A DNA stretch of 54,382 nt from Octopus bimaculoides (taxonomy: Eukaryota), in assembly GCF_001194135.2 (NCBI RefSeq), contig NC_069005.1:26270246-26324627 (forward strand), in the 5' to 3' direction. The translations under genes were made by a program, and so were the position numbers. The notes beneath the pieces are model-generated. The model had not been told where the DNA came from and did not search any database. It saw nothing but the letters and a program-made list of their open reading frames with translations. How positions within the stretch are numbered: the first letter of the stretch is position 1; the number at the start of each line of letters is the position of its first letter. This document shows, one piece after another, positions 4,600 to 50,191 of the stretch.

Positions 4600-6260
4600 G
4601 TATACATTCGCTGCTTTCTTCCAGGGAATCTAGTGCTCTTAGCTTAGTTTTTCCTTGGCGCTGGCCAGATTGGAGCAATCTCGAGTATAACCAGTCGAAA
4701 TTGCAAAGATAATCTGGAACTTTTAATGTGTTTTAGAGATAGTTTTAATAAAATATTTTTTTAATAAGTTACTCAAACGGTGGGTTTCACATTTTGGGTT
4801 AACTAGTGTTAGTCTTAATTTTAAATCGTTTGGTAATATAGCATTAATACATATGCTTGTGAATTCTTATGTTCGTTTTGCGAATTATTAGTAAGCCATA
4901 GAATTATTGGTAAGCCAATATTGCGAATTATTGGTAAGCCATAGAAAATACTAGATTTGCATTTGAAAATAGTTGTGTAATTATTTCTTTATCTGTCAAT
5001 CATTTTCGGTAAATGTAGTTGTAAGATTTTACATTGCTTTCCGTTGGTTGTTGCTTACAACTGTTTTTGTTGTGTATATCACCTTCAAGATTGGAGAATT
5101 CTAAATTTTTATAATATTCAGTTTTCGACCGTATGTCCACAAACGCTTTATCTATTTTGTTACTTGTCAACTCGTTGTCATTTTTTTTTTCAATTCAATT
5201 TTGTTTTTTCCATTCAGAAGTGTTGAAATTAGACTTAATTCTGTATTTATATATGACGTTTATTAAAAACCTAGTATTCTCGTTGAAGAGTTTTGTCAAA
5301 CAGCAGAAAATCGACGCCGTGTTGTCTTTCTCCTACGTCACCAACTTGAACTAGTCTACATTTAACGTGATTCAACTCACCCAGTCAATGGACTGTTAAA
5401 TGAGGACATATTAAACTGAAGTAATACACTGATCTTCTGATTCTTTTTCCTCGGACTTGGTCTGACTCTTGTCTCGTCTCATCTTGTGTCTATTTTTACA
5501 CGTATTTTTCTAGTGACCGAGTCTTGTTCTCACTACTGTTTAGAGAAATTATTCTGCTAGTAATAACTTACAACCACGATACCAATTGGAATTATTTGTT
5601 TCTCTAGCTATTTATTCGATTAGATATATCTATATCTTTATCAGATTTCTTAATCAATTCGTTGTCATTTTTTCCTTTTTCAATTCAATTCTGCTTTTCC
5701 ATCCAGAAGAACTGAAGTTTGACCTAAATATTTATACATGGCCTTATATAGAAATTTTAAATGTAGTCACAAGAACCAAATGTTTTATTTCTACCTCTCG
5801 GTGAAAAGTAATTGTTTTTGTTCCTAACAAGCGATTCATCATCGTTACTATTATATATGTGCGAGGTGCAATTTTCTACAAAACTCTGAAGTGTCGTCTT
5901 TAATTTCATTCTAAATATATCTCCAAGGGTAAATTTTAGTCCTTTTACCAGTATATCGATTTGTTGTATTGTTCCGGTCTTCTTTGATGAATTTATTACA
6001 TTTGGTTTTCTCGGCGTGTTATACTCTTCCACTGGTCAGGGTATAAAACAATGGTAACGGTAATTTCGTTGGTTGGAGCGATTAGTATTTCCAACCTTAT
6101 TAGTGTAGTTTGAAGTGTGATTTTGTTGTCGAAGATTATTAAATGTACTTACAGATCCCATGTTTCTTTCATGGATGCGATTCAAATTATTTCTTTGTAT
6201 TACTCACTGCTGGAGAAAAAATGGATGCCTTCTTGTTGATGTATTTCTAATATGTGAGTT
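4600..6260 (-). mobile_element. Decayed Penelope-like retroelement RT region (two overlapping fragments)
   Basis: Minus-strand peptides QQIDILVKGLKF (~LLSKGLKF), ELIKKSDKD (~IIKPADKG) and FYGLPIIR at 4921-4948 (~FYGLPKIHK), with many stops and frameshifts. Confidence 0.7.
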
Positions 6261-8092
6261 CAAAAATGTTTTGAAGGAAACAAAAGTGAAGATCTATGCA
6301 GAAACGACTAAACTACTCTGAAGATCAAATTATAAACGTTTCTGAACAATACAACAACAACAAAAAAAGACCAACTTTTCATTTCAAAGTAAATCGTTTT
6401 CAAAGCAGAAACAGGAACAACTCACAAAGAGATAGAAATACATGGAAAAGAGAAAATTTCACAAGCTACTATGAACATACACACACACACATACACACAC
6501 CACACACACACACGCCCACNNNNNNNNNNNNNNNNNNNNNNNNNNNNNNNNNNNNNNNNNNNNNNNNNNNNNNNNNNNNNNNNNNNNNNNNNNNNNNNNN
6601 NATATGTATGTGCATATATATGTATGTATGTGCATATATATGTATGTATGTGCATATATATGTATGTATGTATATATATATATATATATATGTATGTATA
6701 TATATGTGTATATATATGTATGTATGTGTATATATATATATATATATATACACATACAGGTGGGGGGGAGAGAAACAGATATATAGACACTCATAACCCA
6801 AACCACGCCTATATTCGTACATACAAACACACACACATACCCACACACGTACATACACACAAACCGACACATTCACGCACTCACACACTCACACATATGC
6901 AAGAAAATGCGTGCACGCACACACCCGCACACAAAGCCACACACACATACACATGCACACAAATAGTCACATTCACACACATCCTTCTTTTATTATTATT
7001 TTTCTCCGGACATTGTACTCATTACATAACCTCCAGACGTTTCACCAATGTTTCCACTTTACAATTTATTTTATGCTTTTTTTTTTTTCATTAAGTATTA
7101 TGTTTTTCGTCCGTGTTTATTTCTCCAATTCCACATTCTTCTTTCTTCCCTTCCACCTCACACACGCACCTGCCAAATCCTCACCNNNNNNNNNNNNNNN
7201 NNNNNNNNNNNNNNNNNNNNNNNNNNNNNNNNNNNNNNNNNNNNNNNNNNNNNNNNNNNNNNNNNNNNNNNNNNNNNNNNNNNNNNNNNNNNNNNNNNNN
7301 NNNNNNNNNNNNNNNNNNNNNNNNNNNNNNNNNNNNNNNNNNNNNNNNNNNNNNNNNNNNNNNNNNNNNNNNNNNNNNNNNNNNNNNNNNNNNNNNNNNN
7401 NNNNNNNNNNNNNNNNNNNNNNNNNNNNNNNNNNNNNNNNNNNNNNNNNNNNNNNNNNNNNNNNNNNNNNNNNNNNNNNNNNNNNNNNNNNNNNNNNNNN
7501 NNNNNNNNNNNNNNNNNNNNNNNNNNNNNNNNNNNNNNNNNNNNNNNNNNNNNNNNNNNNNNNNNNNNNNNNNNNNNNNNNNNNNNNNNNNNNNNNNNNN
7601 NNNNNNNNNNNNNNNNNNNNNNNNNNNNNNNNNNNNNNNNNNNNNNNNNNNNNNNNNNNNNNNNNNNNNNNNNNNNNNNNNNNNNNNNNNNNNNNNNNNN
7701 NNNNNNNNNNNNNNNNNNNNNNNNNNNNNNNNNNNNNNNNNNNNNNNNNNNNNNNNNNNNNNNNNNNNNNNNNNNNNNNNNNNNNNNNNNNNNNNNNNNN
7801 NNNNNNNNNNNNNNNNNNNNNNNNNNNNNNNNNNNNNNNNNNNNNNNNNNNNNNNNNNNNNNNNNNNNNNNNNNNNNNNNNNNNNNNNNNNNNNNNNNNN
7901 NNNNNNNNNNNNNNNNNNNNNNNNNNNNNNNNNNNNNNNNNNNNNNNNNNNNNNNNNNNNNNNNNNNNNNNNNNNNNNNNNNNNNNNNNNNNNNNNNNNN
8001 NNNNNNNNNNNNNNNNNNNNNNNNNNNNNNNNNNNNNNNNNNNNNNNNNNNNNNNNNNNNNNNNNNNNNNNNNTATATATATGTATATATGA

Positions 8093-8242
8093 GTGTTGGA
8101 GTGTTTACATCTCCGTACACCTAACAGTTCGGCAAAAAAGGATCGATAGAATAAGTACTGGGGTTCGATTCATTCGTCTAAAAATCTTTCAAGGCTGTGC
8201 CCCAGCATGGCCGCAGTCTAATGACTGAAACAGGTAAGAGAT
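8093..8242 (+). mobile_element. Family B SINE 3' end
   Basis: CCCCAGCATGGCCGCAGTCTAATGACTGAAACAGGTAAGAG. Confidence 0.8.
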
Positions 8243-8540
8243 ATTAATATAAAAATAAAAGATATCTTGCCGTGTCTTCAGTAGATATTTAATAACAGAA
8301 ACCTATATTGCGAAATTGTAGAAGCCTTATTATTTGTCGTATCATCTGTCGGCGTTTGCTATGACAGGAAAATGACATTTTGATAACGTCTCCGGTGCTA
8401 TATCTACTTGAGTTCGCTTAAACTTTCTCAAAAGTTCAACTGAACCAGTTGGAATATTGAGACAGTAATTATGCTTTGTTATTCAGCACTCTTTTCCATA
8501 CAAAGCTTCAATATTCTTTTCTAACAGTCCCTTTCAGTAA

Positions 8541-8665
8541 GGTGACGAGCTGGCAGAATCGTTAATACACCGGGCAAAATGCTTAGCGGCATTTCGTCCG
8601 TCATGAGTTCAAATTCTGAGTTCAAATTCCGTCTGAGTTTGACTTTGCGTTTTATCCTTTCATCC
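8541..8665 (+). mobile_element. Family A SINE, 3'-truncated
   Basis: GACGAGCTGGCAGAATCGTTA head, with a duplicated GAGTTCAAATTC B-box. Confidence 0.8.
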
Positions 8666-8680
8666 TGAAAAAGATAGAAC

Positions 8681-8722
<42 letters not shown>

Positions 8723-8820
8723 ATAAAAGTAGAATTCTACCTTTACAGTTTTTTTAGCTGGAAAATAATACCATTGTATTGCAATAATATTTATAATTTT
8801 AACATAAAACATCTTCAGTG

Positions 8821-8896
8821 AACCTTGCTGAAGAAGACTAACCAGATTTATGATAACAAACGTATTCTGGAAAGTCCGAAACTCGAGTACTAGGTT
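8821..8896 (+). ncRNA. Minimal type I hammerhead ribozyme motif (Penelope pLTR type)
   Basis: Stem I AACCTTG/CTAGGTT (6 of 7 pairs), CTGAAGA 8828-8834, stem II GACT/AGTC plus CCAGA/TCTGG, GAAA 8878-8881, palindromic stem III ACTCGAGT, GUA cleavage triplet ending at 8889. The 10.1-11.1 position is an A.C mismatch. Confidence 0.75.
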
Positions 8897-8998
8897 ATCC
8901 ATTCTAGGTTGTCCATTTATCCGGCATTCTTCCTAGAGGTAAGACAAAAAATTTTATCGAAAAAATAAGTACCCTTTGGACTTTTGGAGTGATACATT

Positions 8999-9193
8999 AG
9001 TACTGTATTTCAAAAGGCCAGCCTCGTCACAGCCTGTGTCAAAACTGTTAAGAGTACGCGCATGTTTGTAGAGTACCCGTAAAGGGTACACATATCTGTG
9101 GAGCGCTCAGCCACATGCACGTTAATTTCACGAGCTGGCTGTTCCGTTGATCGGATCAACTGAAACCCACATCGCCGTAACCGACGGAGGACC
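8999..9193 (+). mobile_element. SINE tail T1 (5'-truncated)
   Basis: Reverse complement of 1-150 (...TTCCGTTGATCGGATCAACTG...). Confidence 0.85.
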
Positions 9194-10114
9194 AGTTATT
9201 TTAGTAAGGAACACGTTGCTGTTGCGTGATCCGTTCTTTATTCTATTCTCATCCTTAGTAATTAGAAACTGATATTTGTATCTCTAAGAATATTTTTCGA
9301 CAGCCTTTTTTCTTTATTTTTTTCTTTACACATTCTGTGAGATATTATCTACTCACAAGTCAGCTTTTCTAGCCAATATTTTGTAAACATTTTACCGGTT
9401 ATCATTCAGGAAGTGTTATATAATTCTCGAAAGCCTATCTGATAGCGAGTTGTTCATACAATCTTTCTTCTTCTAAGCAGGGTCTCAATGGATTTAAGAA
9501 CTTGAATTCAGATTATTCTAGTTTGTAGATTGATATCCCTGGTTATGTAGTACACATTCGTTCTCTGGAGAGGAAATGATTTCCTTTGAAAGCATCAATA
9601 TAAAGATTATGGAAATAGAGATCACAAAAGTAGGCGAAATCAATTGTAGAGACGTAACACAATATCATATTAAATCCGGTCATAAACAAATTTAAAACAA
9701 AAGCTCTCTGTTTAGACGGTAGATATTCATCTAAGTTTTTATTATTACAGTTCGGGGTTAAAGTTTAGCCTTAAGTTTGCAAGGTTATAATTTATGGTTT
9801 ACGTATATGTTACGATTATGCTGTTGAAATTTAATAACTGTTTTATTTTACTTAAATTTAAACCTTTCTTCTTCAACTGATGGGGCCTGCTATTTCATAA
9901 CGTTTAAGTATTTCATTCCGAAAGTCAGTCTTTTAAAAGGCGTTCCGATAAAGTATTAGTGAAGTACTGAGTTGATGTAATCGAGTAACACCCTTCCATC
10001 AAATATGAGATCTTATTTCAGAAAAAAATATGAATCAGTGGTCGTGCTCTACTATTTCCGTAAACACGAAATCTCGTAACGTGACGTGGCTGTAAAGCGA
10101 GGCACCTCCATATT

Positions 10115-10351
10115 CTTTTATTTTATTTTTTTACTTGTTACTCAGTCATTAGGCTGCGGCAATGCCGGGGCGTCGCCTTCAAAAACTTTTAGTCTACTGA
10201 ATCGACACTCAGTAGTATTTTTTTTTTTTCTTTTTAGAGCCTAGCACTTATACTATCGATCTCCTCTACCGAACCGCTAGTTTACGAGGACGTAAACACA
10301 CCAACACCGGTTGTCAAGCAGTGATGCCGGGACAAACACAGACGCAAAGAC
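10115..10351 (-). mobile_element. Family B SINE 3' half
   Basis: Matches 30386-30590. A plus-strand head fragment of the same family follows at 10412-10445. Confidence 0.8.
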
Positions 10352-11018
10352 CCCGTCTCATATATATATATATATATATATATAATTCAAAGGTAAAAAA
10401 ACAACAAGTGTCTTAGGCAAGTGTCTTCTACTATAGCCTCAGGGGCTTANNNNNNNNNNNNNNNNNNNNNNNNNNNNNNNNNNNNNNNNNNNNNNNNNNN
10501 NNNNNNNNNNNNNNNNNNNNNNNNNNNNNNNNNNNNNNNNNNNNNNNNNNNNNNNNNNNNNNNNNNNNNNNNNNNNNNNNNNNNNNNNNNNNNNNNNNNN
10601 NNNNNNNNNNNNNNNNNNNNNNNNNNNNNNNNNNNNNNNNNNNNNNNNNNNNNNNNNNNNNNNNNNNNNNNNNNNNNNNNNNNNNNNNNNNNNNNNNNNN
10701 NNNNNNNNNNNNNNNNNNNNNNNNNNNNNNNNNNNNNNNNNNNNNNNNNNNNNNNNNNNNNNNNNNNNNNNNNNNNNNNNNNNNNNNNNNNNNNNNNNNN
10801 NNNNNNNNNNNNNNNNNNNNNNNNNNNNNNNNNNNNNNNNNNNNNNNNNNNNNNNNNNNNNNNNNNNNNNNNNNNNNNNNNNNNNNNNNNNNNNNNNNNN
10901 NNNNNNNNNNNNNNNNNNNNNNNNNNNNNNNNNNNNNNNNNNNNNNNNNNNNNNNNNNNNNNNNNNNNNNNNNNNNNNNNNNNNNNNNNNNNNNNNNNNN
11001 NNNNNNNNNNNNNNNNNN

Positions 11019-11064
<46 letters not shown>

Positions 11065-11247
11065 AATTAAAAGAATAAAAGAATAATTCCGTAAAAATAA
11101 TTGTTACGTTTCAACTACGTCATAAGAGACTTTGTAATATATAATCAGTTGAGAGCTTTCAGTGAGCCTTAAGCCGACTTTTCACCGTTTCATGAAACTT
11201 TAATAAATAAGCTGCTAAAGAAATTTGGACATCTTATTGGAATAACA

Positions 11248-12057
11248 ATGTCACTTAATCTTGTTACTCACAAGTTGTCTGCTCTATATGAAGCCGAAAA
11301 TCATCAGAAGAAAGTTAAGAATTATTTCGAATGCCATGATTTTAGAAGTGATGATCGTCTGACTTTGGTCAATTGGATGTTAGCTTGCGTCGATCGTTAC
11401 AAGGCATCTAAGGAAGTCTTTCACTTGGCTGTTTCATTATTTGATTTATTCATGTCTTGCAAAAAATTACCACGGATTTCCATAGAAAAACTGCAATGCA
11501 TCGCGACATGCTGTCTCTCGGTTTCATTCGAAATGGTATACAAAGGGAAAACGTCTGATGCGCAGGAGCTTGTGAATTTGGTGTCAAGCGTCGACCCCGA
11601 GTCGACAAAAGAACAGCTTAAAATGGTACGCAGTTTGATCTCTGAACATTTCAATATTAGGAAATTAATTATTACTCCGTATACTTTCTTTAATTACTTC
11701 CGCGTTATTCTCAAATTAAAACCGACCCACGACTTGTATTGTATAACCAATTATATATTAGAACTATCACATTATGATGACATCATTTGTGTGAGATCTC
11801 AATACAAACCGAGCCTTATAGCGACAGCTGCTATCCACACAGGACTAATAGCTTTGAAGCTTCATTACGAATGGCTTTCTGATTTATCAGTTCTAACTCC
11901 CTACACTGGAGAAGAGAAAGAGTTAATACTTCTTCATAAGCGTATGTTGGAGTTACTCAAAGCAGCTTCTAAAGAAACGAAATATAGTTCAGCGCAAGCA
12001 AGATACTATAGAGAAGAAAACAACTGTGTTGCTCAGATTGACTATTCAAACGTTTAA
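11248..12057 (+). CDS. Intronless divergent A/B-type cyclin-fold protein (269 aa; N- and C-terminal cyclin boxes)
   Basis: DRLTLVNWML ~ MRAILVDWL; YKASKEVFHLAVSLFDLFMS ~ YKLQNETLHLAVNYIDRFLS; KLQCIATCCL ~ KLQLVGTAAM; YILELS and YKPSLIATAA ~ FLGELS and YLPSVIAGAA of the second cyclin box. ACAATG start context, in-frame TAA upstream at 11170-11172, AATAAA at 12056-12061. Confidence 0.9.
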   Translation: MSLNLVTHKLSALYEAENHQKKVKNYFECHDFRSDDRLTLVNWMLACVDRYKASKEVFHLAVSLFDLFMSCKKLPRISIEKLQCIATCCLSVSFEMVYKGKTSDAQELVNLVSSVDPESTKEQLKMVRSLISEHFNIRKLIITPYTFFNYFRVILKLKPTHDLYCITNYILELSHYDDIICVRSQYKPSLIATAAIHTGLIALKLHYEWLSDLSVLTPYTGEEKELILLHKRMLELLKAASKETKYSSAQARYYREENNCVAQIDYSNV

Positions 12058-12061
12058 TAAA
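12056..12061 (+). terminator. Candidate polyadenylation signal AATAAA overlapping the cyclin stop codon
   Basis: ...GTT TAA TAA AAC: stop TAA at 12055-12057 and AATAAA at 12056-12061. Use is unverified. Confidence 0.4.
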
Positions 12062-12334
12062 ACTTTGTAAATTTTCTGACTTGTCTCCATATTGTAGAAG
12101 TATTAAACACACGGACACACACATGCACACACTAACACAATCACACTCACATAACATTATCTACATACAACAGAGATTGATTGTTGCGATTATTACGTTT
12201 GGACGAACTGTACATATTATAAAAGCACAGAAAGAGAAAAGTACATACATACATACATACATACATACATACATACATACATACATACATACATACATAC
12301 ATACATGCATGCATGCATGCATGCATGCATGCAT

Positions 12335-30385: not shown

Positions 30386-30783
30386 TTCTCTTTTACTCTT
30401 TTACTTGTTTCAGTCATTTGACTGTGGCCATGCTGGAGCACCGCCTTTAGTCGAGCAAATCAACGCCAGGACTTATTCTTTGTAAGCCTAGTACTTATTC
30501 TATCGATCTCTTTTGCCGAACCGCTATGTTACGGGGACGTAAACACACCAGCATCGGTTGTCAAGCGATGTTGGGGGGACAGACACAAACACATACACAC
30601 ACATACATATATATATATACATATATACGACGGGCTTCTTTCAGTTTCCGTCTACCAAATCCACTCACAAGGCTTTGGTCGGCCTGAGGCTATGGTAGAA
30701 GACACTTACCCAAGGTGCCACGCAGTGGGACTGAGCCCGGAACCATGTGGTTGGTAAGCAAGCTACTTACCACACAGCCACTC
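30386..30783 (-). mobile_element. tRNA-derived SINE family B, full length, with internal microsatellite
   Basis: Head GAGTGGCTGTGTGGTAAGTAG (A-box), GGCTCAGTCCC (B-box-like), CCTTGGGTAAGTGTCTTCTAC, internal (TA)/(TG) tract, and 3' tail GACTGAAACAAGTAAAAGAGTAAAAGAG. Confidence 0.92.
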
Positions 30784-32612: not shown

Positions 32613-34023
32613 TAAAAGTATATTTATGTGCATGTCTGCATGAATATATGTATGTACGCATGTAGGTGTGTGTGTGTTTGTGTGTGTGTGTTTGTGTGTG
32701 TGTTTGTGTGTGTGTTTGTGTGTGTGTGTTTGTGTGTGTGTGTTTGTGTTTGTGTGTGTGCCTGTGTGTGTCAAAATGGCTGCATGGATGACGAGAAATC
32801 TAACAAAACTTATTGCAGTGAGCGCCAAAAGCAATTGAACATTCTCTGGCACTTCCATTGCAGCAGCACACCGCCCCCTGGAGGGATCAATATTGTCTAA
32901 AAGGATCGAAATTGTTGTGATCACCAGCCGGAAGCTGATGGTCCCGTAATGCAAGCTTCATGTAAAATGCAATATAATATAATATAATATAATATAATAT
33001 AATATAATATAATATAATATACAATGATGGCGGTTTCTTCTTGTCCGACAACCATGAAGAAGAGCGGCACGCCTTCAAGTGGCTATGCAAGCCAATTCTT
33101 AACGCTGCGGGGCCTCTCTTCCTGCTCGAGCTTAGTAAAGATGTAATCGACTTATCCCCTCTCCCAGCCCCACCTTGATGGCTTTGTGTCAAAGTTTGAA
33201 ACCAATATTTTCAGGCAAAAAAATGTTATTCTGTGCGATGTTACGTACGTCACACGTTTTGGCTCCTCTTCATGCATTTCATTCGATGGGTGAATCCTGG
33301 ATTGGCTTCACAGGATTATAGATATTTTACCGATCGAACATCGGAGACAGTTACAATAAATACGGCAGCAGAAACGTGCGTCGGACACATTGAAATCAAA
33401 TGTGCTGAATGATTGAACTGTGAAAATGAAAAATATGAAGATGTACTCAATCTCCCTATTCATTGTAATTGTCTTACACACAAGCACACACAAATATACA
33501 TACATACATACATACATACATACATACATACATANNNNNNNNNNATATATATATATATATATATGTATGAAAGTATATATGTATGTGTATATATATATAT
33601 AATATATATGTATGTATTTATATTTGTATGAATGTGTCTGTGCCTACGTGTGTGTGTCTGTATAGATATAGATATATACATACATGCAGTCATACAGACG
33701 GACGGACGGACAGATAGACATAATTTATATTTTCTAAAGAGATGAGTCACCGCTGTCAATGCAAATTTGCAATTTCTCATGAAAACTTCGATTAGTTTTT
33801 TGACACATTTCACGTGTTATCCAGCCTGTCACTTCAATGATGTACTTTAAAACCTGAAGTGTTTTGCGTTTTCTGTTGGGTTTTCTGCCAATCAGCCGCA
33901 CAATTTCTAATTCTATGCATTCCTCTTAATTCTAAGATATTTTGAATTCTTCGCAATACCTATGAACAAAGAAGAAATTAAACAAAATATTAAATATTAG
34001 TTTTGCTTTTTGTTGTCTTTTAT

Positions 34024-34200
34024 TTTTTACTCGTTTCACCTATTGGACTGCGGCCATGTTGGGGCGCCGCACTGATAGGTTCAGTCGAGCAAATCGACTC
34101 CAGTATATATGAATTTTTTTTTTAAGTCTGGTACTCTGTCGTTTTCCTTTTACTGAATCGCTAGGTTACGGGAACTTGAACACACCAACATCCGTGACAA
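34024..34200 (-). mobile_element. Family B SINE 3' half, diverged
   Basis: GGACTGCGGCCATGTTGGGGCG...AGTCGAGCAAATCGAC. Confidence 0.7.
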
Positions 34201-34622
34201 ACGCAAATACGATACACACACACACATACATACATACATACATACGTACATACATACATACATACATACATACATACATACATACATACATACGTACATA
34301 CACAATGGCGCCGTCAACATCAGTCGTGCAGGTATAGAGGACCGTTTAAAAAGTCCGTTTTGAACGCCTTCCTCTAGAAATATGCCGACTTCTCCAGCCT
34401 AAATTGGTAACTGGTTTATTTCTCCAATAATTAATAAGAGAAACACCTTTTGCTCAACAACGTAGCGTTACCTTGAACAGATTTTAAAATATACATCTAC
34501 ACCACGTGGAATCTCGCTAAACCGATTGCGCTAGCCACCATTTTATCTTCTTTTATTCTATTCAAGTTTTTTGGTTTTTTAAAAATCTTTTACGCATCTT
34601 TATTTTTTTGAATACCCTTGTG

Positions 34623-49536: not shown

Positions 49537-50191
49537 TACTCTTTTACTTGTTTCAGTCATTTGACTGCGGCCATGCTGGAGCACCGGCTTTAGTCGAGCA
49601 AATCGACCACAGGACTTATTCTTTGTAAGCCTAGTACTTATTCTATCGGTCCTCTTTTGCCGAACCGCCAGATTACGGGGACTTAAACACACCAGCATCG
49701 GTTGTCAAGAGATGGTGGGGGGACAAACACAGACACACAAACACAGACACACAAACACACACACACACACACNNNNNNNNNNNNNNNNNNNNNNNNNNNN
49801 NNNNNNNNNNNNNNNNNNNNNNNNNNNNNNNNNNNNNNNNNNNNNNNNNNNNNNNNNNNNNNNNNNNNNNNNNNNNNNNNNNNNNNNNNNNNNNNNNNNN
49901 NNNNNNNNNNNNNNNNNNNNNNNNNNNNNNNNNNNNNNNNNNNNNNNNNNNNNNNNNNNNNNNNNNNNNNNNNNNNNNNNNNNNNNNNNNNNNNNNNNNN
50001 NNNNNNNNNNNNNNNNNNNNNNNNNNNNNNNNNNNNNNNNNNNNNNNNNNNNNNNNNNNNNNNNNNNNNNNNNNNNNNNNNNNNNNNNNNNNNNNNNNNN
50101 NNNNNNNNNNNNNNNNNNNNNNNNNNNGTAGTGGGACTGAACCCGGAATCACATGGTTGCACGTTAAGCTTGTTAACCAGGCAGCCATGCC
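49537..50191 (-). mobile_element. Family B SINE spanning an assembly gap
   Basis: Tail at 49537-49740 and head at 50128-50191, with the gap starting in the internal (CA)n. Confidence 0.85.

What the first reader, a model, noticed from the sequence alone, without database searches (positions are those of the whole stretch)
11248..12057. Intact 'pseudo-cyclin': fold residues kept, CDK-binding Lys/Glu pair lost
Seen: an uninterrupted 269-codon ORF amid decayed TEs. It keeps the structural Arg-Asp pair (R37/D66, equivalent to cyclin A2 R211/D240) and Leu40/Trp43 of the MRAIL patch. The invariant Lys of ASKxEE (cyclin A2 K266) aligns to Glu95, and the helix-5 Glu (E295) aligns to Val127 or Arg128 depending on register. 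Established: K266 and E295 are key CDK-contact residues. Inference: this protein may not activate CDK1/2. If Arg128 is the true equivalent, the K-to-E and E-to-R changes form a reciprocal charge swap. It could be a scaffold, a substrate-sequestering decoy or a partner of an atypical kinase.
Basis: partly seen in the sequence, partly recalled or inferred. Interest (0 to 1): 0.8.

Follow-up and report, generated by a model that had tools for sequence, protein, structure and literature searches.

The report
Octopod short cyclin lacking CDK-contact residues
This is a real, selectively maintained octopus gene for a stripped-down cyclin: it keeps the cyclin fold but has lost the residues all ordinary cyclins use to grip their kinase, so it probably no longer works as a normal cell-cycle kinase activator.

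Summary
The 269-codon ORF at 11248-12057(+) is real. It encodes Cyclin_N plus Cyclin_C and nothing else. AlphaFold2 models it with high confidence (pLDDT 95.7), and its best structural match is cyclin A2 (TM 0.83-0.88). The window is Octopus bimaculoides, record CM046625.1.

Intact orthologs lie at a syntenic locus in O. vulgaris, in O. sinensis, and in a third species known only from read assemblies. Pairwise dN/dS is 0.26-0.28, so this is not a pseudogene. The gene belongs to a small family of about 260-aa proteins with a single coding exon. The family has three paralog groups found in octopods (Octopus, Argonauta) and a fourth of unknown taxon. Canonical A/B cyclins are far more distant (E about 1e-10).

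The fold residues R37/D66 and L40/W43 are confirmed. E295 of cyclin A2 aligns to R128 in four alignment methods. No alignment places a Lys at the K266 position, but the register is unstable: it gives S93, a 2-residue gap, or M96. E95 appears only in an ungapped-helix reading, so the "charge swap" is not established. Position 137, the F304 equivalent, is Ile. All 8 family members lack the Lys and Glu, while 82 of 82 related canonical cyclins have them.

The most likely reading is a cyclin-fold protein that does not bind a CDK in the canonical way, comparable to the cyclin domain of cyclin F. CDK binding and expression remain untested.

The parts
11248..12057 (+). Complete single-exon CDS (269 aa plus TAA stop) of the short cyclin, paralog A of the family
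   Evidence: ORF listing. The identical protein is called on GCA_001194135.2 CM046625.1. Orthologs are intact. dN/dS is 0.26-0.28.
11278..11625 (+). First cyclin fold (Pfam Cyclin_N, residues 11-126), preceded by an N-terminal helix (residues 3-19)
   Evidence: Pfam. AlphaFold2 helices 3-19, 34-50, 55-69, 79-98, 103-115 and 121-135.
11674..12039 (+). Second cyclin fold (Pfam Cyclin_C, residues 143-264)
   Evidence: Pfam, AlphaFold2 model, Foldseek match to cyclin A2.
11356..11358 (+). Arg37 codon, equivalent to cyclin A2 R211. It pairs with Asp66 (11443-11445, equivalent to D240) as the structural salt bridge.
   Evidence: Both residues are invariant in all 8 family members and in 79-80 of 82 canonical cyclins.
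11524..11535 (+). Codons S93-F94-E95-M96, the C-terminal part of helix alpha3 where canonical cyclins have (A/S)K(F/Y)EE. There is no Lys in any register.
   Evidence: phmmer gives K266 = S93. MAFFT and hmmsearch give a 2-residue gap. hhalign gives M96. K is present in 82/82 canonical cyclins and 0/8 family members.
11629..11631 (+). Arg128 codon, equivalent to cyclin A2 E295
   Evidence: Four alignment methods agree. Canonical cyclins have E in 82/82; the family has R/H/R/Y/L/Y/Y/F.
11656..11658 (+). Ile137 codon, equivalent to cyclin A2 F304 (the third CDK-interface residue)
   Evidence: Canonical cyclins have F in 66/82; the family has I/I/I/G/H/F/F/Y. Its role in CDK binding is taken from PMC12356897.
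11091..11148 (+). Conserved upstream block containing a CRE-like ACGTCA (11117-11122) and TATATAA (11138-11144). Putative core promoter (inferred).
   Evidence: Three-species alignment, motif positions, background rate of the half-site.
12056..12061 (+). AATAAA overlapping the stop codon. Putative polyadenylation signal (inferred). A second ATTAAA lies at 12102-12107.
   Evidence: Sequence. The AATAAA is conserved in O. vulgaris and reads ATTAAA in the third species.

Best explanation
The ORF is a functional gene for a 'cyclin-box-only' protein. It has an N-terminal helix plus two cyclin folds. It has no N-terminal regulatory region, no D-box or KEN degron, and no other domain.

It belongs to a small family descended from an A/B-type cyclin. 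Three paralog groups (A, B, C) are documented in octopods, and a fourth (D) comes from unidentified organisms. Every member with genomic DNA in hand has a single uninterrupted coding exon, which fits, but does not prove, an origin from a 5'-truncated retrocopy followed by duplication.

The fold-stabilising residues are kept. The canonical CDK-gripping surface has been dismantled: the Lys of the KxEE motif, both Glu of that motif, E295, L299 and F304 are all changed. Across paralogs this surface is the least conserved part of the protein.

The Lys/Glu pair normally hydrogen-bonds backbone atoms of the loop just before the CDK's PSTAIRE helix. The protein therefore most likely does not bind or activate a CDK in the canonical way.

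I infer that it acts through its remaining conserved surfaces as a CDK-independent adaptor or competitor for short-motif ligands, in the manner of the cyclin domain of cyclin F. These surfaces include a remodelled but family-conserved hydrophobic patch (W43, L40, L82 and Q83 kept; M210 to D/N; E220 to an invariant Ala).

Shown here: the gene, the fold, selection, the family, and the residue losses. Inferred: loss of CDK binding, the docking or decoy role, and the retrocopy origin.
For: - ORF and domains. All 9 aligned members have only Cyclin_N and Cyclin_C.
- Structure: AlphaFold2 pLDDT 95.7, pTM 0.93. The best PDB fold matches are cyclin A2 chains, TM 0.83-0.88.
- Relationship to known cyclins: the family profile scores cyclin A2 at 2e-22, B1 at 1e-15, D3 at 5e-13 and E1 at 1e-9.
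- Selection: dN/dS is 0.26-0.28 and dS is 0.17-0.37. The locus is collinear with O. vulgaris over about 7.5 kb of the window (4855-12335).
- Family: five clusters at E <= 1e-40, then a drop to 1e-10. Members are named from O. bimaculoides, O. vulgaris, O. sinensis and Argonauta hians.
- Gene structure: single-exon or continuous ORFs at every locus with genomic DNA.
- Residue losses: K and E are present in 82/82 canonical cyclins and 0/8 family members. The F304, E268, E269 and L299 columns are also changed.
- Conservation among paralogs (mean BLOSUM score) drops to 1.10 at the alpha3 C-terminus, against 2.93 in canonical cyclins, and to 0.35 in the alpha3-alpha4 loop, against 1.95. Most other helices, especially in the second fold, are more conserved than in canonical cyclins.
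- No full D-box or KEN motif.
[quoted passage not shown] The Lys-Glu pair bonds backbone atoms before the PSTAIRE helix and is conserved from cyclins B, E, D3, T1 and viral cyclin to Pho80 and cyclin Y (PMC3590450).
Against: - No direct test of CDK binding was possible. There was no multimer prediction and no biochemistry.
- The N-terminal helix that touches the CDK in A/B cyclins is retained with invariant residues (L10, E17, Q20, K21).
- Hydrophobic residues remain on the alpha3 and alpha5 faces (F94, M96, V97, L124, L130).
- Within paralog A the former CDK face is still constrained (omega 0.26-0.58). That face may therefore bind something, possibly still a kinase.
- The hydrophobic patch has lost E220 and M210, so binding of classical RxL motifs is doubtful.
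- Expression is not shown. The read-assembly contigs cannot be assigned to RNA or DNA.
Confidence: 0.5

Rival explanations
1. It is an atypical but still kinase-activating cyclin. It binds a canonical or divergent octopus CDK through the retained N-terminal helix and hydrophobic alpha3/alpha5 contacts. A rebuilt polar pair (for example E95/R128) would replace K266/E295.
For: - The overall fold is closest to CDK2-bound cyclin A2.
- The N-terminal helix is conserved.
- The former CDK face is under omega < 1 within paralog A.
- Positions 95 and 128 change together in character across paralogs: acid/base in A, D/Y in B, I/L and T/F in C.
Against: - The K/E contacts are made to CDK backbone atoms (PMC3590450), so side-chain changes in a partner kinase cannot easily compensate.
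- E268, E269, L299 and F304 are also lost.
- The face is the most variable region between paralogs.
- R128 is not conserved even among orthologs; it is His in P0002.
- The E95 = K266 register is not given by any aligner.
Confidence: 0.3
2. It is a young processed pseudogene or neutral retrocopy that happens to remain open.
For: It is intronless, lacks the N-terminal half of a normal cyclin, sits in repeat-rich DNA, and has lost residues that are otherwise invariant.
Against: - The ORF is intact in at least four species at a syntenic locus.
- dN/dS is 0.26-0.28 with dS up to 0.37, p from 8e-6 to 2e-10.
- Paralogs are retained in Argonauta and Octopus.
- AlphaFold2 is highly confident in the fold.
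- The chance of an open frame of this length is about 6e-5 per window.
Confidence: 0.03
3. It is an ordinary B-type mitotic cyclin, as the database name 'cyclin-B2-1-like' implies.
For: RefSeq and ENA records give this name. Pfam cyclin domains are present.
Against: - There is no N-terminal region, D-box or KEN motif.
- K266, E295 and F304 are absent.
- Identity to any canonical cyclin is only about 29% or less.
- Cyclin A2 scores better than B1.
Confidence: 0.02
4. It is a captured viral or transposon-borne cyclin.
For: It is a short, intronless cyclin like viral cyclins. A mariner-type transposase ORF lies 1.5 kb from the clade-D copy.
Against: - Viral cyclin models match worse (TM <= 0.69) than cellular cyclin A2.
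- No relative was found in 2.9 million viral contigs.
- The locus is stably syntenic between Octopus species.
- There is only one copy in the window.
Confidence: 0.03

Closest known systems
Cyclin A2 and A/B-type cyclins (Pfam Cyclin_N PF00134 plus Cyclin_C PF02984)
   Same: - It has the two cyclin folds plus the N-terminal helix.
- It gives the best sequence match (5e-11 for the single protein, 2e-22 for the family profile) and the best structural match (TM 0.83-0.88).
- The R211/D240 salt bridge is kept, as are W217, L214, L253 and Q254.
   Different: - It has no N-terminal regulatory half or degrons.
- It has a single coding exon.
- K266, E268, E269, E295, L299 and F304 are all replaced.
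- In the hydrophobic patch, M210 is D/N and E220 is Ala.
- Identity is only about 23-29%.
Cyclin F (CCNF/FBXO1), cyclin domain
   Same: It is a cyclin-fold protein lacking the conserved K266/E295/F304 CDK-interface residues. It is reported not to bind CDKs and to use the cyclin domain as a docking module for short motifs (PMC12356897).
   Different: - The octopus protein has no F-box or any other domain, so it cannot itself recruit SCF.
- It is about 270 aa long; cyclin F is several-fold longer (from my own knowledge).
- Homology to cyclin F specifically was not tested, because no cyclin F sequence was available in the tools.
- The acidic RxL-contact residue E220 is lost here.
Viral cyclins (gammaherpesvirus and giant-virus cyclins)
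   Same: They are short proteins consisting of little more than the cyclin box, encoded without introns.
   Different: - By my own knowledge and PMC3590450, viral cyclin retains the Lys/Glu pair and activates CDK6.
- Structural similarity is lower (TM <= 0.69).
- There is no viral-contig relative.

Membership tests
Cyclin superfamily (Pfam Cyclin_N + Cyclin_C) | Both Pfam domains score above their gathering thresholds | tested here: met
   Cyclin_N scores 45.9 bits against a cutoff of 23. Cyclin_C scores 35.2 bits against 22. All 9 family members match both domains.
Cyclin superfamily (Pfam Cyclin_N + Cyclin_C) | Double five-helix cyclin fold | tested here: met
   AlphaFold2 pLDDT 95.7 and pTM 0.93. 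Foldseek TM 0.83-0.88 to cyclin A2.
Cyclin superfamily (Pfam Cyclin_N + Cyclin_C) | Buried Arg-Asp salt bridge (cyclin A2 R211/D240) | tested here: met
   R37 and D66 are invariant in the family and present in 79/82 and 80/82 canonical cyclins.
CDK-activating cyclins (A, B, D, E, T, Y, Pho80 and others) | Conserved Lys (cyclin A2 K266) in alpha3 | tested here: not met
   No Lys lies in residues 82-98. The aligned residue is S93, a gap or M96 depending on the method. K is present in 82/82 canonical cyclins and 0/8 family members.
CDK-activating cyclins (A, B, D, E, T, Y, Pho80 and others) | Conserved Glu (cyclin A2 E295) in alpha5 | tested here: not met
   R128 aligns there in four methods. E is present in 82/82 canonical cyclins and 0/8 family members.
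CDK-activating cyclins (A, B, D, E, T, Y, Pho80 and others) | Aromatic residue at the cyclin A2 F304 position | tested here: not met
   The window protein has I137. The family has I/I/I/G/H/F/F/Y, against F in 66/82 canonical cyclins.
CDK-activating cyclins (A, B, D, E, T, Y, Pho80 and others) | Physical binding and activation of a CDK | not testable with these tools
   This needs a multimer prediction with octopus CDKs or biochemistry.
Mitotic A/B-type cyclins (the database name is 'cyclin-B2-1-like') | N-terminal region carrying a destruction box (RxxLxxxxN) or KEN box | tested here: not met
   The protein starts 36 residues before the MRAIL-equivalent helix. It has no full D-box and no KEN motif.
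Mitotic A/B-type cyclins (the database name is 'cyclin-B2-1-like') | MRAIL hydrophobic patch with an acidic RxL contact (M210, I213, L214, W217, E220, L253, Q254) | tested here: inconclusive
   L40, W43, L82 and Q83 are kept. M210 is D36, I213 is T39, and E220 is A46, which is invariant in the family. Ligand binding was not tested.
Cyclin F-like (CDK-independent substrate receptor) | F-box linking the cyclin domain to SCF | tested here: not met
   Pfam finds no domain other than the two cyclin domains.
Cyclin F-like (CDK-independent substrate receptor) | Absence of the K266/E295/F304 interface residues | tested here: met
   The cyclin F property itself is taken from PMC12356897.

The most novel reading that the evidence does not exclude
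On this reading, octopods evolved and diversified their own family of free-standing cyclin boxes with three paralog groups, possibly more. These proteins have given up CDK activation altogether. They act as stand-alone docking or decoy proteins, or as partners of a non-CDK protein, through a remodelled hydrophobic patch and a rapidly diversifying former CDK face. That would be a CDK-independent 'orphan cyclin' system not described in any animal lineage.
Probability: 0.35. Interest if true: 0.6.

Novelty: new variant of a known kind. Interest (0 to 1): 0.4.

Why it matters
Cyclins are defined by their ability to activate CDKs. Well-studied exceptions such as cyclin F are few, and they have been informative about what the cyclin fold can do on its own.

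This case is a lineage-restricted family that is selectively maintained and has duplicated. It consists of minimal cyclin boxes in which every hallmark CDK contact is gone. It offers a natural experiment on CDK-independent use of the cyclin fold, and a compact 269-aa protein that is easy to express and test.

It also corrects database annotation. 'cyclin-B2-1-like' is misleading, and the O. vulgaris model is truncated to 174 aa although the full ORF is intact.

The interest is moderate. Divergent lineage-specific cyclins are common, and nothing here yet shows an unusual function.

Tried and rejected
- A word-indexed database search with the family alignment timed out. The exhaustive representative search served instead.
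- Literature searches for the run accessions, protein accessions, gene names, and octopus/cephalopod cyclin or retrogene terms found nothing about this gene.
- I tried to use the read-assembly contigs L001/L002 and L007-L010 as evidence of transcription. They have no poly(A) tails and are collinear with genomic DNA, so they cannot be told apart from genomic unitigs.
- I tried to identify the taxon of clade D (P0006/P0170). It has no named relatives and shares no repeats with the Octopus loci. It remains unknown.
- Viral origin: the viral fold library and the viral contig scan were both negative.
- The bootstrap value for family monophyly in the neighbour-joining tree is unreliable because of rooting, so I do not use it. 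Family coherence rests on the gap in E-values.
- A residue-level structural superposition on 1FIN was not possible, because model coordinates are not exposed. The E95-versus-S93-versus-M96 register is therefore unresolved.
- Region-specific dN/dS has too few substitutions to show a significant difference between the former CDK face and the rest of the protein.

Full report
**Observation**

The window has an ATG-initiated ORF at 11248..12057 on the + strand, encoding 269 aa. It is the only long non-repetitive open frame in the 54 kb. The rest of the window is microsatellites, low-complexity sequence, SINE-like repeats and 20 assembly gaps amounting to 16.4% N. With the window's base composition, about 6e-5 open stretches of this length (294 codons stop to stop) are expected by chance. 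The identical protein is called on Octopus bimaculoides assembly GCA_001194135.2, record CM046625.1 (35.5 Mb), at about 26.28 Mb.

**What it encodes**

Pfam finds Cyclin_N (residues 11-126, 5.7e-12, 45.9 bits against a cutoff of 23) and Cyclin_C (residues 143-264, 1.4e-8, 35.2 bits against 22), and no other domain. The best solved relatives by sequence are cyclin A2 chains (5e-11), then cyclin B1 (6e-6), D1 (1e-5) and E1 (8e-4).

An AlphaFold2 model built on a 90-sequence alignment is very confident, with mean pLDDT 95.7 and pTM 0.93. It shows an N-terminal helix (3-19) followed by two five-helix cyclin folds. Foldseek against the PDB returns cyclin A2 from CDK2 complexes as the top hits, with TM 0.83-0.88 and rmsd 2.2-2.9 Å. 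Viral cyclins match worse, with TM at most 0.69. A scan of 2.9 million viral contigs found no relative.

The protein has no full D-box and no KEN box. It begins only 36 residues before the MRAIL-equivalent helix, so the N-terminal regulatory half of a normal A/B cyclin is absent.

**It is a gene, not a pseudogene**

- O. vulgaris carries an intact 269-codon ORF (L003 9716-10525). The deposited annotation starts at an internal Met and gives only 174 aa.
- O. sinensis has a 269-aa RefSeq model, XP_029651267.
- A third species, unnamed and known only from read assemblies, has a 271-aa ortholog at 80% identity.
- Nei-Gojobori estimates give dS = 0.17-0.37, dN = 0.05-0.10 and dN/dS = 0.26-0.28. The deficit of nonsynonymous changes is significant, with Fisher p from 8e-6 to 2e-10.
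- The O. vulgaris and O. bimaculoides loci are collinear over about 7.5 kb of the window (4855-12335), interrupted only by repeats. The gene is therefore vertically inherited at a stable position.

**A small family**

An exhaustive HMMER scan of 1.84 billion representative proteins found five full-length clusters at E <= 1e-40 and one fragment at 2e-17. The next hits are canonical cyclins at about 1e-10 and no more than about 29-31% identity. The family members are as follows:

| Group | Members | Length | Identity to the window protein |
|---|---|---|---|
| A | This gene and its orthologs | 269-271 aa | 80-100% |
| B | O. bimaculoides XP_014784986 | 257 aa | 44% |
| C | O. sinensis and O. vulgaris (265 aa); Argonauta hians (268 aa) | 265-268 aa | about 42-47% |
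| D | Read assemblies and one ENA contig, taxon unknown | 265 aa | about 35% |

A and B coexist in O. bimaculoides on different chromosomes. A and C coexist in O. vulgaris and O. sinensis. These are therefore paralogs, and the presence of C in Argonauta dates the duplication to before the Argonauta-Octopus split.

All loci with genomic DNA have a single uninterrupted coding exon. All nine aligned members have only the two cyclin domains. The family profile scores cyclin A2 at 2e-22, B1 at 1e-15, D3 at 5e-13 and E1 at 1e-9, so the family derives from the A/B-type branch. An origin as a 5'-truncated retrocopy followed by duplication would explain the intronless, N-terminally short architecture, but that is inference.

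R37 = R211, D66 = D240, L40 = L214 and W43 = W217 are confirmed by the phmmer alignment to cyclin A2. In 82 related canonical cyclins these columns are R 79/82, D 80/82, L 70/82 and W 80/82. R37, D66 and W43 are invariant in the family, while position 40 varies conservatively (L/V/I).

E295 aligns to R128 in four independent methods: phmmer, profile hmmsearch, MAFFT and hhalign. That column is Glu in 82/82 canonical cyclins and R/H/R/Y/L/Y/Y/F in the family.

The K266 column is Lys in 82/82 canonical cyclins and in none of the eight family members. Its exact equivalent here depends on the register:

- phmmer gives S93, with F94 = F267 and E95 = E268.
- MAFFT and hmmsearch treat 'SK' as deleted.
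- hhalign gives M96.

AlphaFold2 does predict 79-98 as one continuous helix, so the E95 reading is geometrically reasonable. I could not verify it because model coordinates are not exposed.

Whichever register is right, there is no Lys between residues 82 and 98. The 'reciprocal charge swap' is therefore not established. R128 is also not conserved: it is His in the 80%-identical ortholog. The pair at positions 95/128 does change in character together across paralogs (E/R, D/R, D/H, D/Y, I/L, T/F, S/Y). That is a weak hint that the two side chains are neighbours.

| Cyclin A2 position | Canonical cyclins | Family |
|---|---|---|
| F304 | F in 66/82 | I137 in the window protein; I/I/I/G/H/F/F/Y across the family |
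| E268 | E in 73/82 | E/D/D/D/I/S/S/T |
| E269 | E in 72/82 | M/K/M/T/Q/E/E/Q |
| L299 | L in 73/82 | S/S/Y/L/I/N/N/M |
| R241 | R in 74/82 | L/I/M |

Conservation among paralogs, measured as mean BLOSUM62 pair score, is lowest exactly on this face. The alpha3 C-terminus scores 1.10, against 2.93 in canonical cyclins. The alpha3-alpha4 loop scores 0.35 against 1.95, and alpha5 scores 1.23 against 1.75. Most other helices, especially those of the second cyclin fold, are more conserved in the family than in the much more diverse canonical set.

Within paralog A this region still has omega < 1 (0.26-0.58, against 0.17-0.24 for the second fold), but the substitution counts are small.

The hydrophobic patch is remodelled in a way that is conserved across the family. 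W43, L40, L82 and Q83 are kept. M210 becomes D/N, E220 becomes an invariant Ala, and R250 is mostly Ile.

**What established knowledge says about these residues**

PMC3590450 states that the Lys266-Glu295 pair makes key hydrogen bonds to backbone atoms of the loop just before the PSTAIRE helix. It also states that the pair is conserved in the complexes of cyclins B, E1, T1, D3, viral cyclin and Pho80, and in cyclin Y.

PMC12356897 uses a triple alanine substitution at K266/E295/F304 to prevent human cyclins from binding Cdk1. [quoted passage not shown]

Because the contacts are to backbone atoms, a partner kinase cannot easily compensate by side-chain changes. A swapped acid/base pair would present the wrong polarity.

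**Best explanation (confidence about 0.5)**

The gene encodes a functional, selectively maintained, free-standing cyclin box that no longer engages a CDK in the canonical way. It most likely acts through its conserved non-CDK surfaces as an adaptor or competitor for short-motif ligands, comparable to the cyclin domain of cyclin F but without an F-box.

- Shown: the gene, the fold, purifying selection, family membership, and loss of the CDK-contact residues.
- Inferred: loss of CDK binding, a docking or decoy role, and the retrocopy origin.

**Rival explanations**

- Main rival (about 0.3): it still binds some kinase, using the retained N-terminal helix and hydrophobic contacts.
- Pseudogene, ordinary B-type cyclin, or viral/TE origin: each is poorly supported (0.03 or less). 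The evidence against them is the dN/dS values, intact orthologs and synteny, the absence of degrons and of the K/E/F residues, and the negative viral searches.

**Comparison and novelty**

By Pfam and by fold the protein is a member of the cyclin superfamily. It fails the tested defining features of CDK-activating cyclins (Lys, Glu, aromatic F304) and of mitotic cyclins (D-box or KEN region). It shares with cyclin F the absence of the interface residues but not the F-box.

Databases call these proteins 'cyclin-B2-1-like' or 'uncharacterized', and I found no paper that discusses them. I rate it a new variant of a known kind. It is moderately interesting (0.4), because divergent lineage-specific cyclins are not rare and neither function nor expression has been shown.

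**Limits**

- There is no expression evidence. The read-assembly contigs have no poly(A) tails and cannot be assigned to RNA or DNA.
- The taxon of clade D is unknown.
- No named cyclin B3, O, F or J sequences were available for a phylogeny.
- No residue-level structural alignment and no complex prediction could be made.

Noticed in passing
window 11117-11122 and 11138-11144; L004 about -100, L005 about -48, L007/L011 about -180 to -212 relative to the ATG: CRE-like half-sites (ACGTCA/TGACGT) lie within 260 nt upstream of the start codon in paralog groups A, B, C (O. sinensis) and D. Group D has two sites, conserved between its two members. Group A also has TATATAA 21 nt downstream of the site. 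The background rate of the hexamer in most of these loci is about 0.02-0.1 per 260 nt. This may be a shared promoter element. Its function is unknown.
   Followed up: partly
about 30-40 nt upstream of the ATG in L001 (paralog A, third species), L004 (B), L005 and L006 (C): A 5'-UTR motif, (C)TAAACAAGC...AAGTTTCG(T), is shared between paralogs that are only about 44% identical as proteins. Noncoding sequence has therefore been retained across old duplicates.
   Followed up: no
L003 9716-10525 (O. vulgaris OX597838.1): The deposited O. vulgaris protein CAI9740729 is 174 aa, starting at an internal Met, but the full 269-codon ORF is intact. This looks like an annotation truncation.
   Followed up: yes
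L005 3001-8035 (O. sinensis CM016862.1): The RefSeq model for paralog C (XP_029634932) takes its last 21 residues from an exon about 4 kb downstream. A continuous ORF homologous to the other paralogs' C-termini runs on to about 3801. This is either alternative 3' splicing or a model artefact.
   Followed up: partly
window 12335-12582, 16747-17100; also 30386-30783, 49541-49763, 15663-15881, 10115-10380, 34013-34268: There are two families of short interspersed repeats, each present several times in the window and in the O. vulgaris locus. One copy lies directly downstream of the gene, after a (CATA)n/(CATG)n microsatellite.
   Followed up: no
L011 8089-8526 (-), ENA ERZ21867824 ctg119165l: A mariner-type Transposase_1 ORF lies 1.5 kb upstream of the clade-D family member. 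That member sits on a 226-kb contig filed as a metagenome assembly. The host organism is unidentified and shares no repeats with the Octopus loci.
   Followed up: partly
window 11191-11202: A three-codon upstream ORF (ATG AAA CTT TAA) lies in the putative 5' UTR. It is conserved in O. vulgaris but not in the third species, which has GTG instead.
   Followed up: no
P0010 (603 aa, ENA): One distant hit carries two tandem complete cyclin-box units in a single protein. It is unrelated to the octopod family.
   Followed up: no
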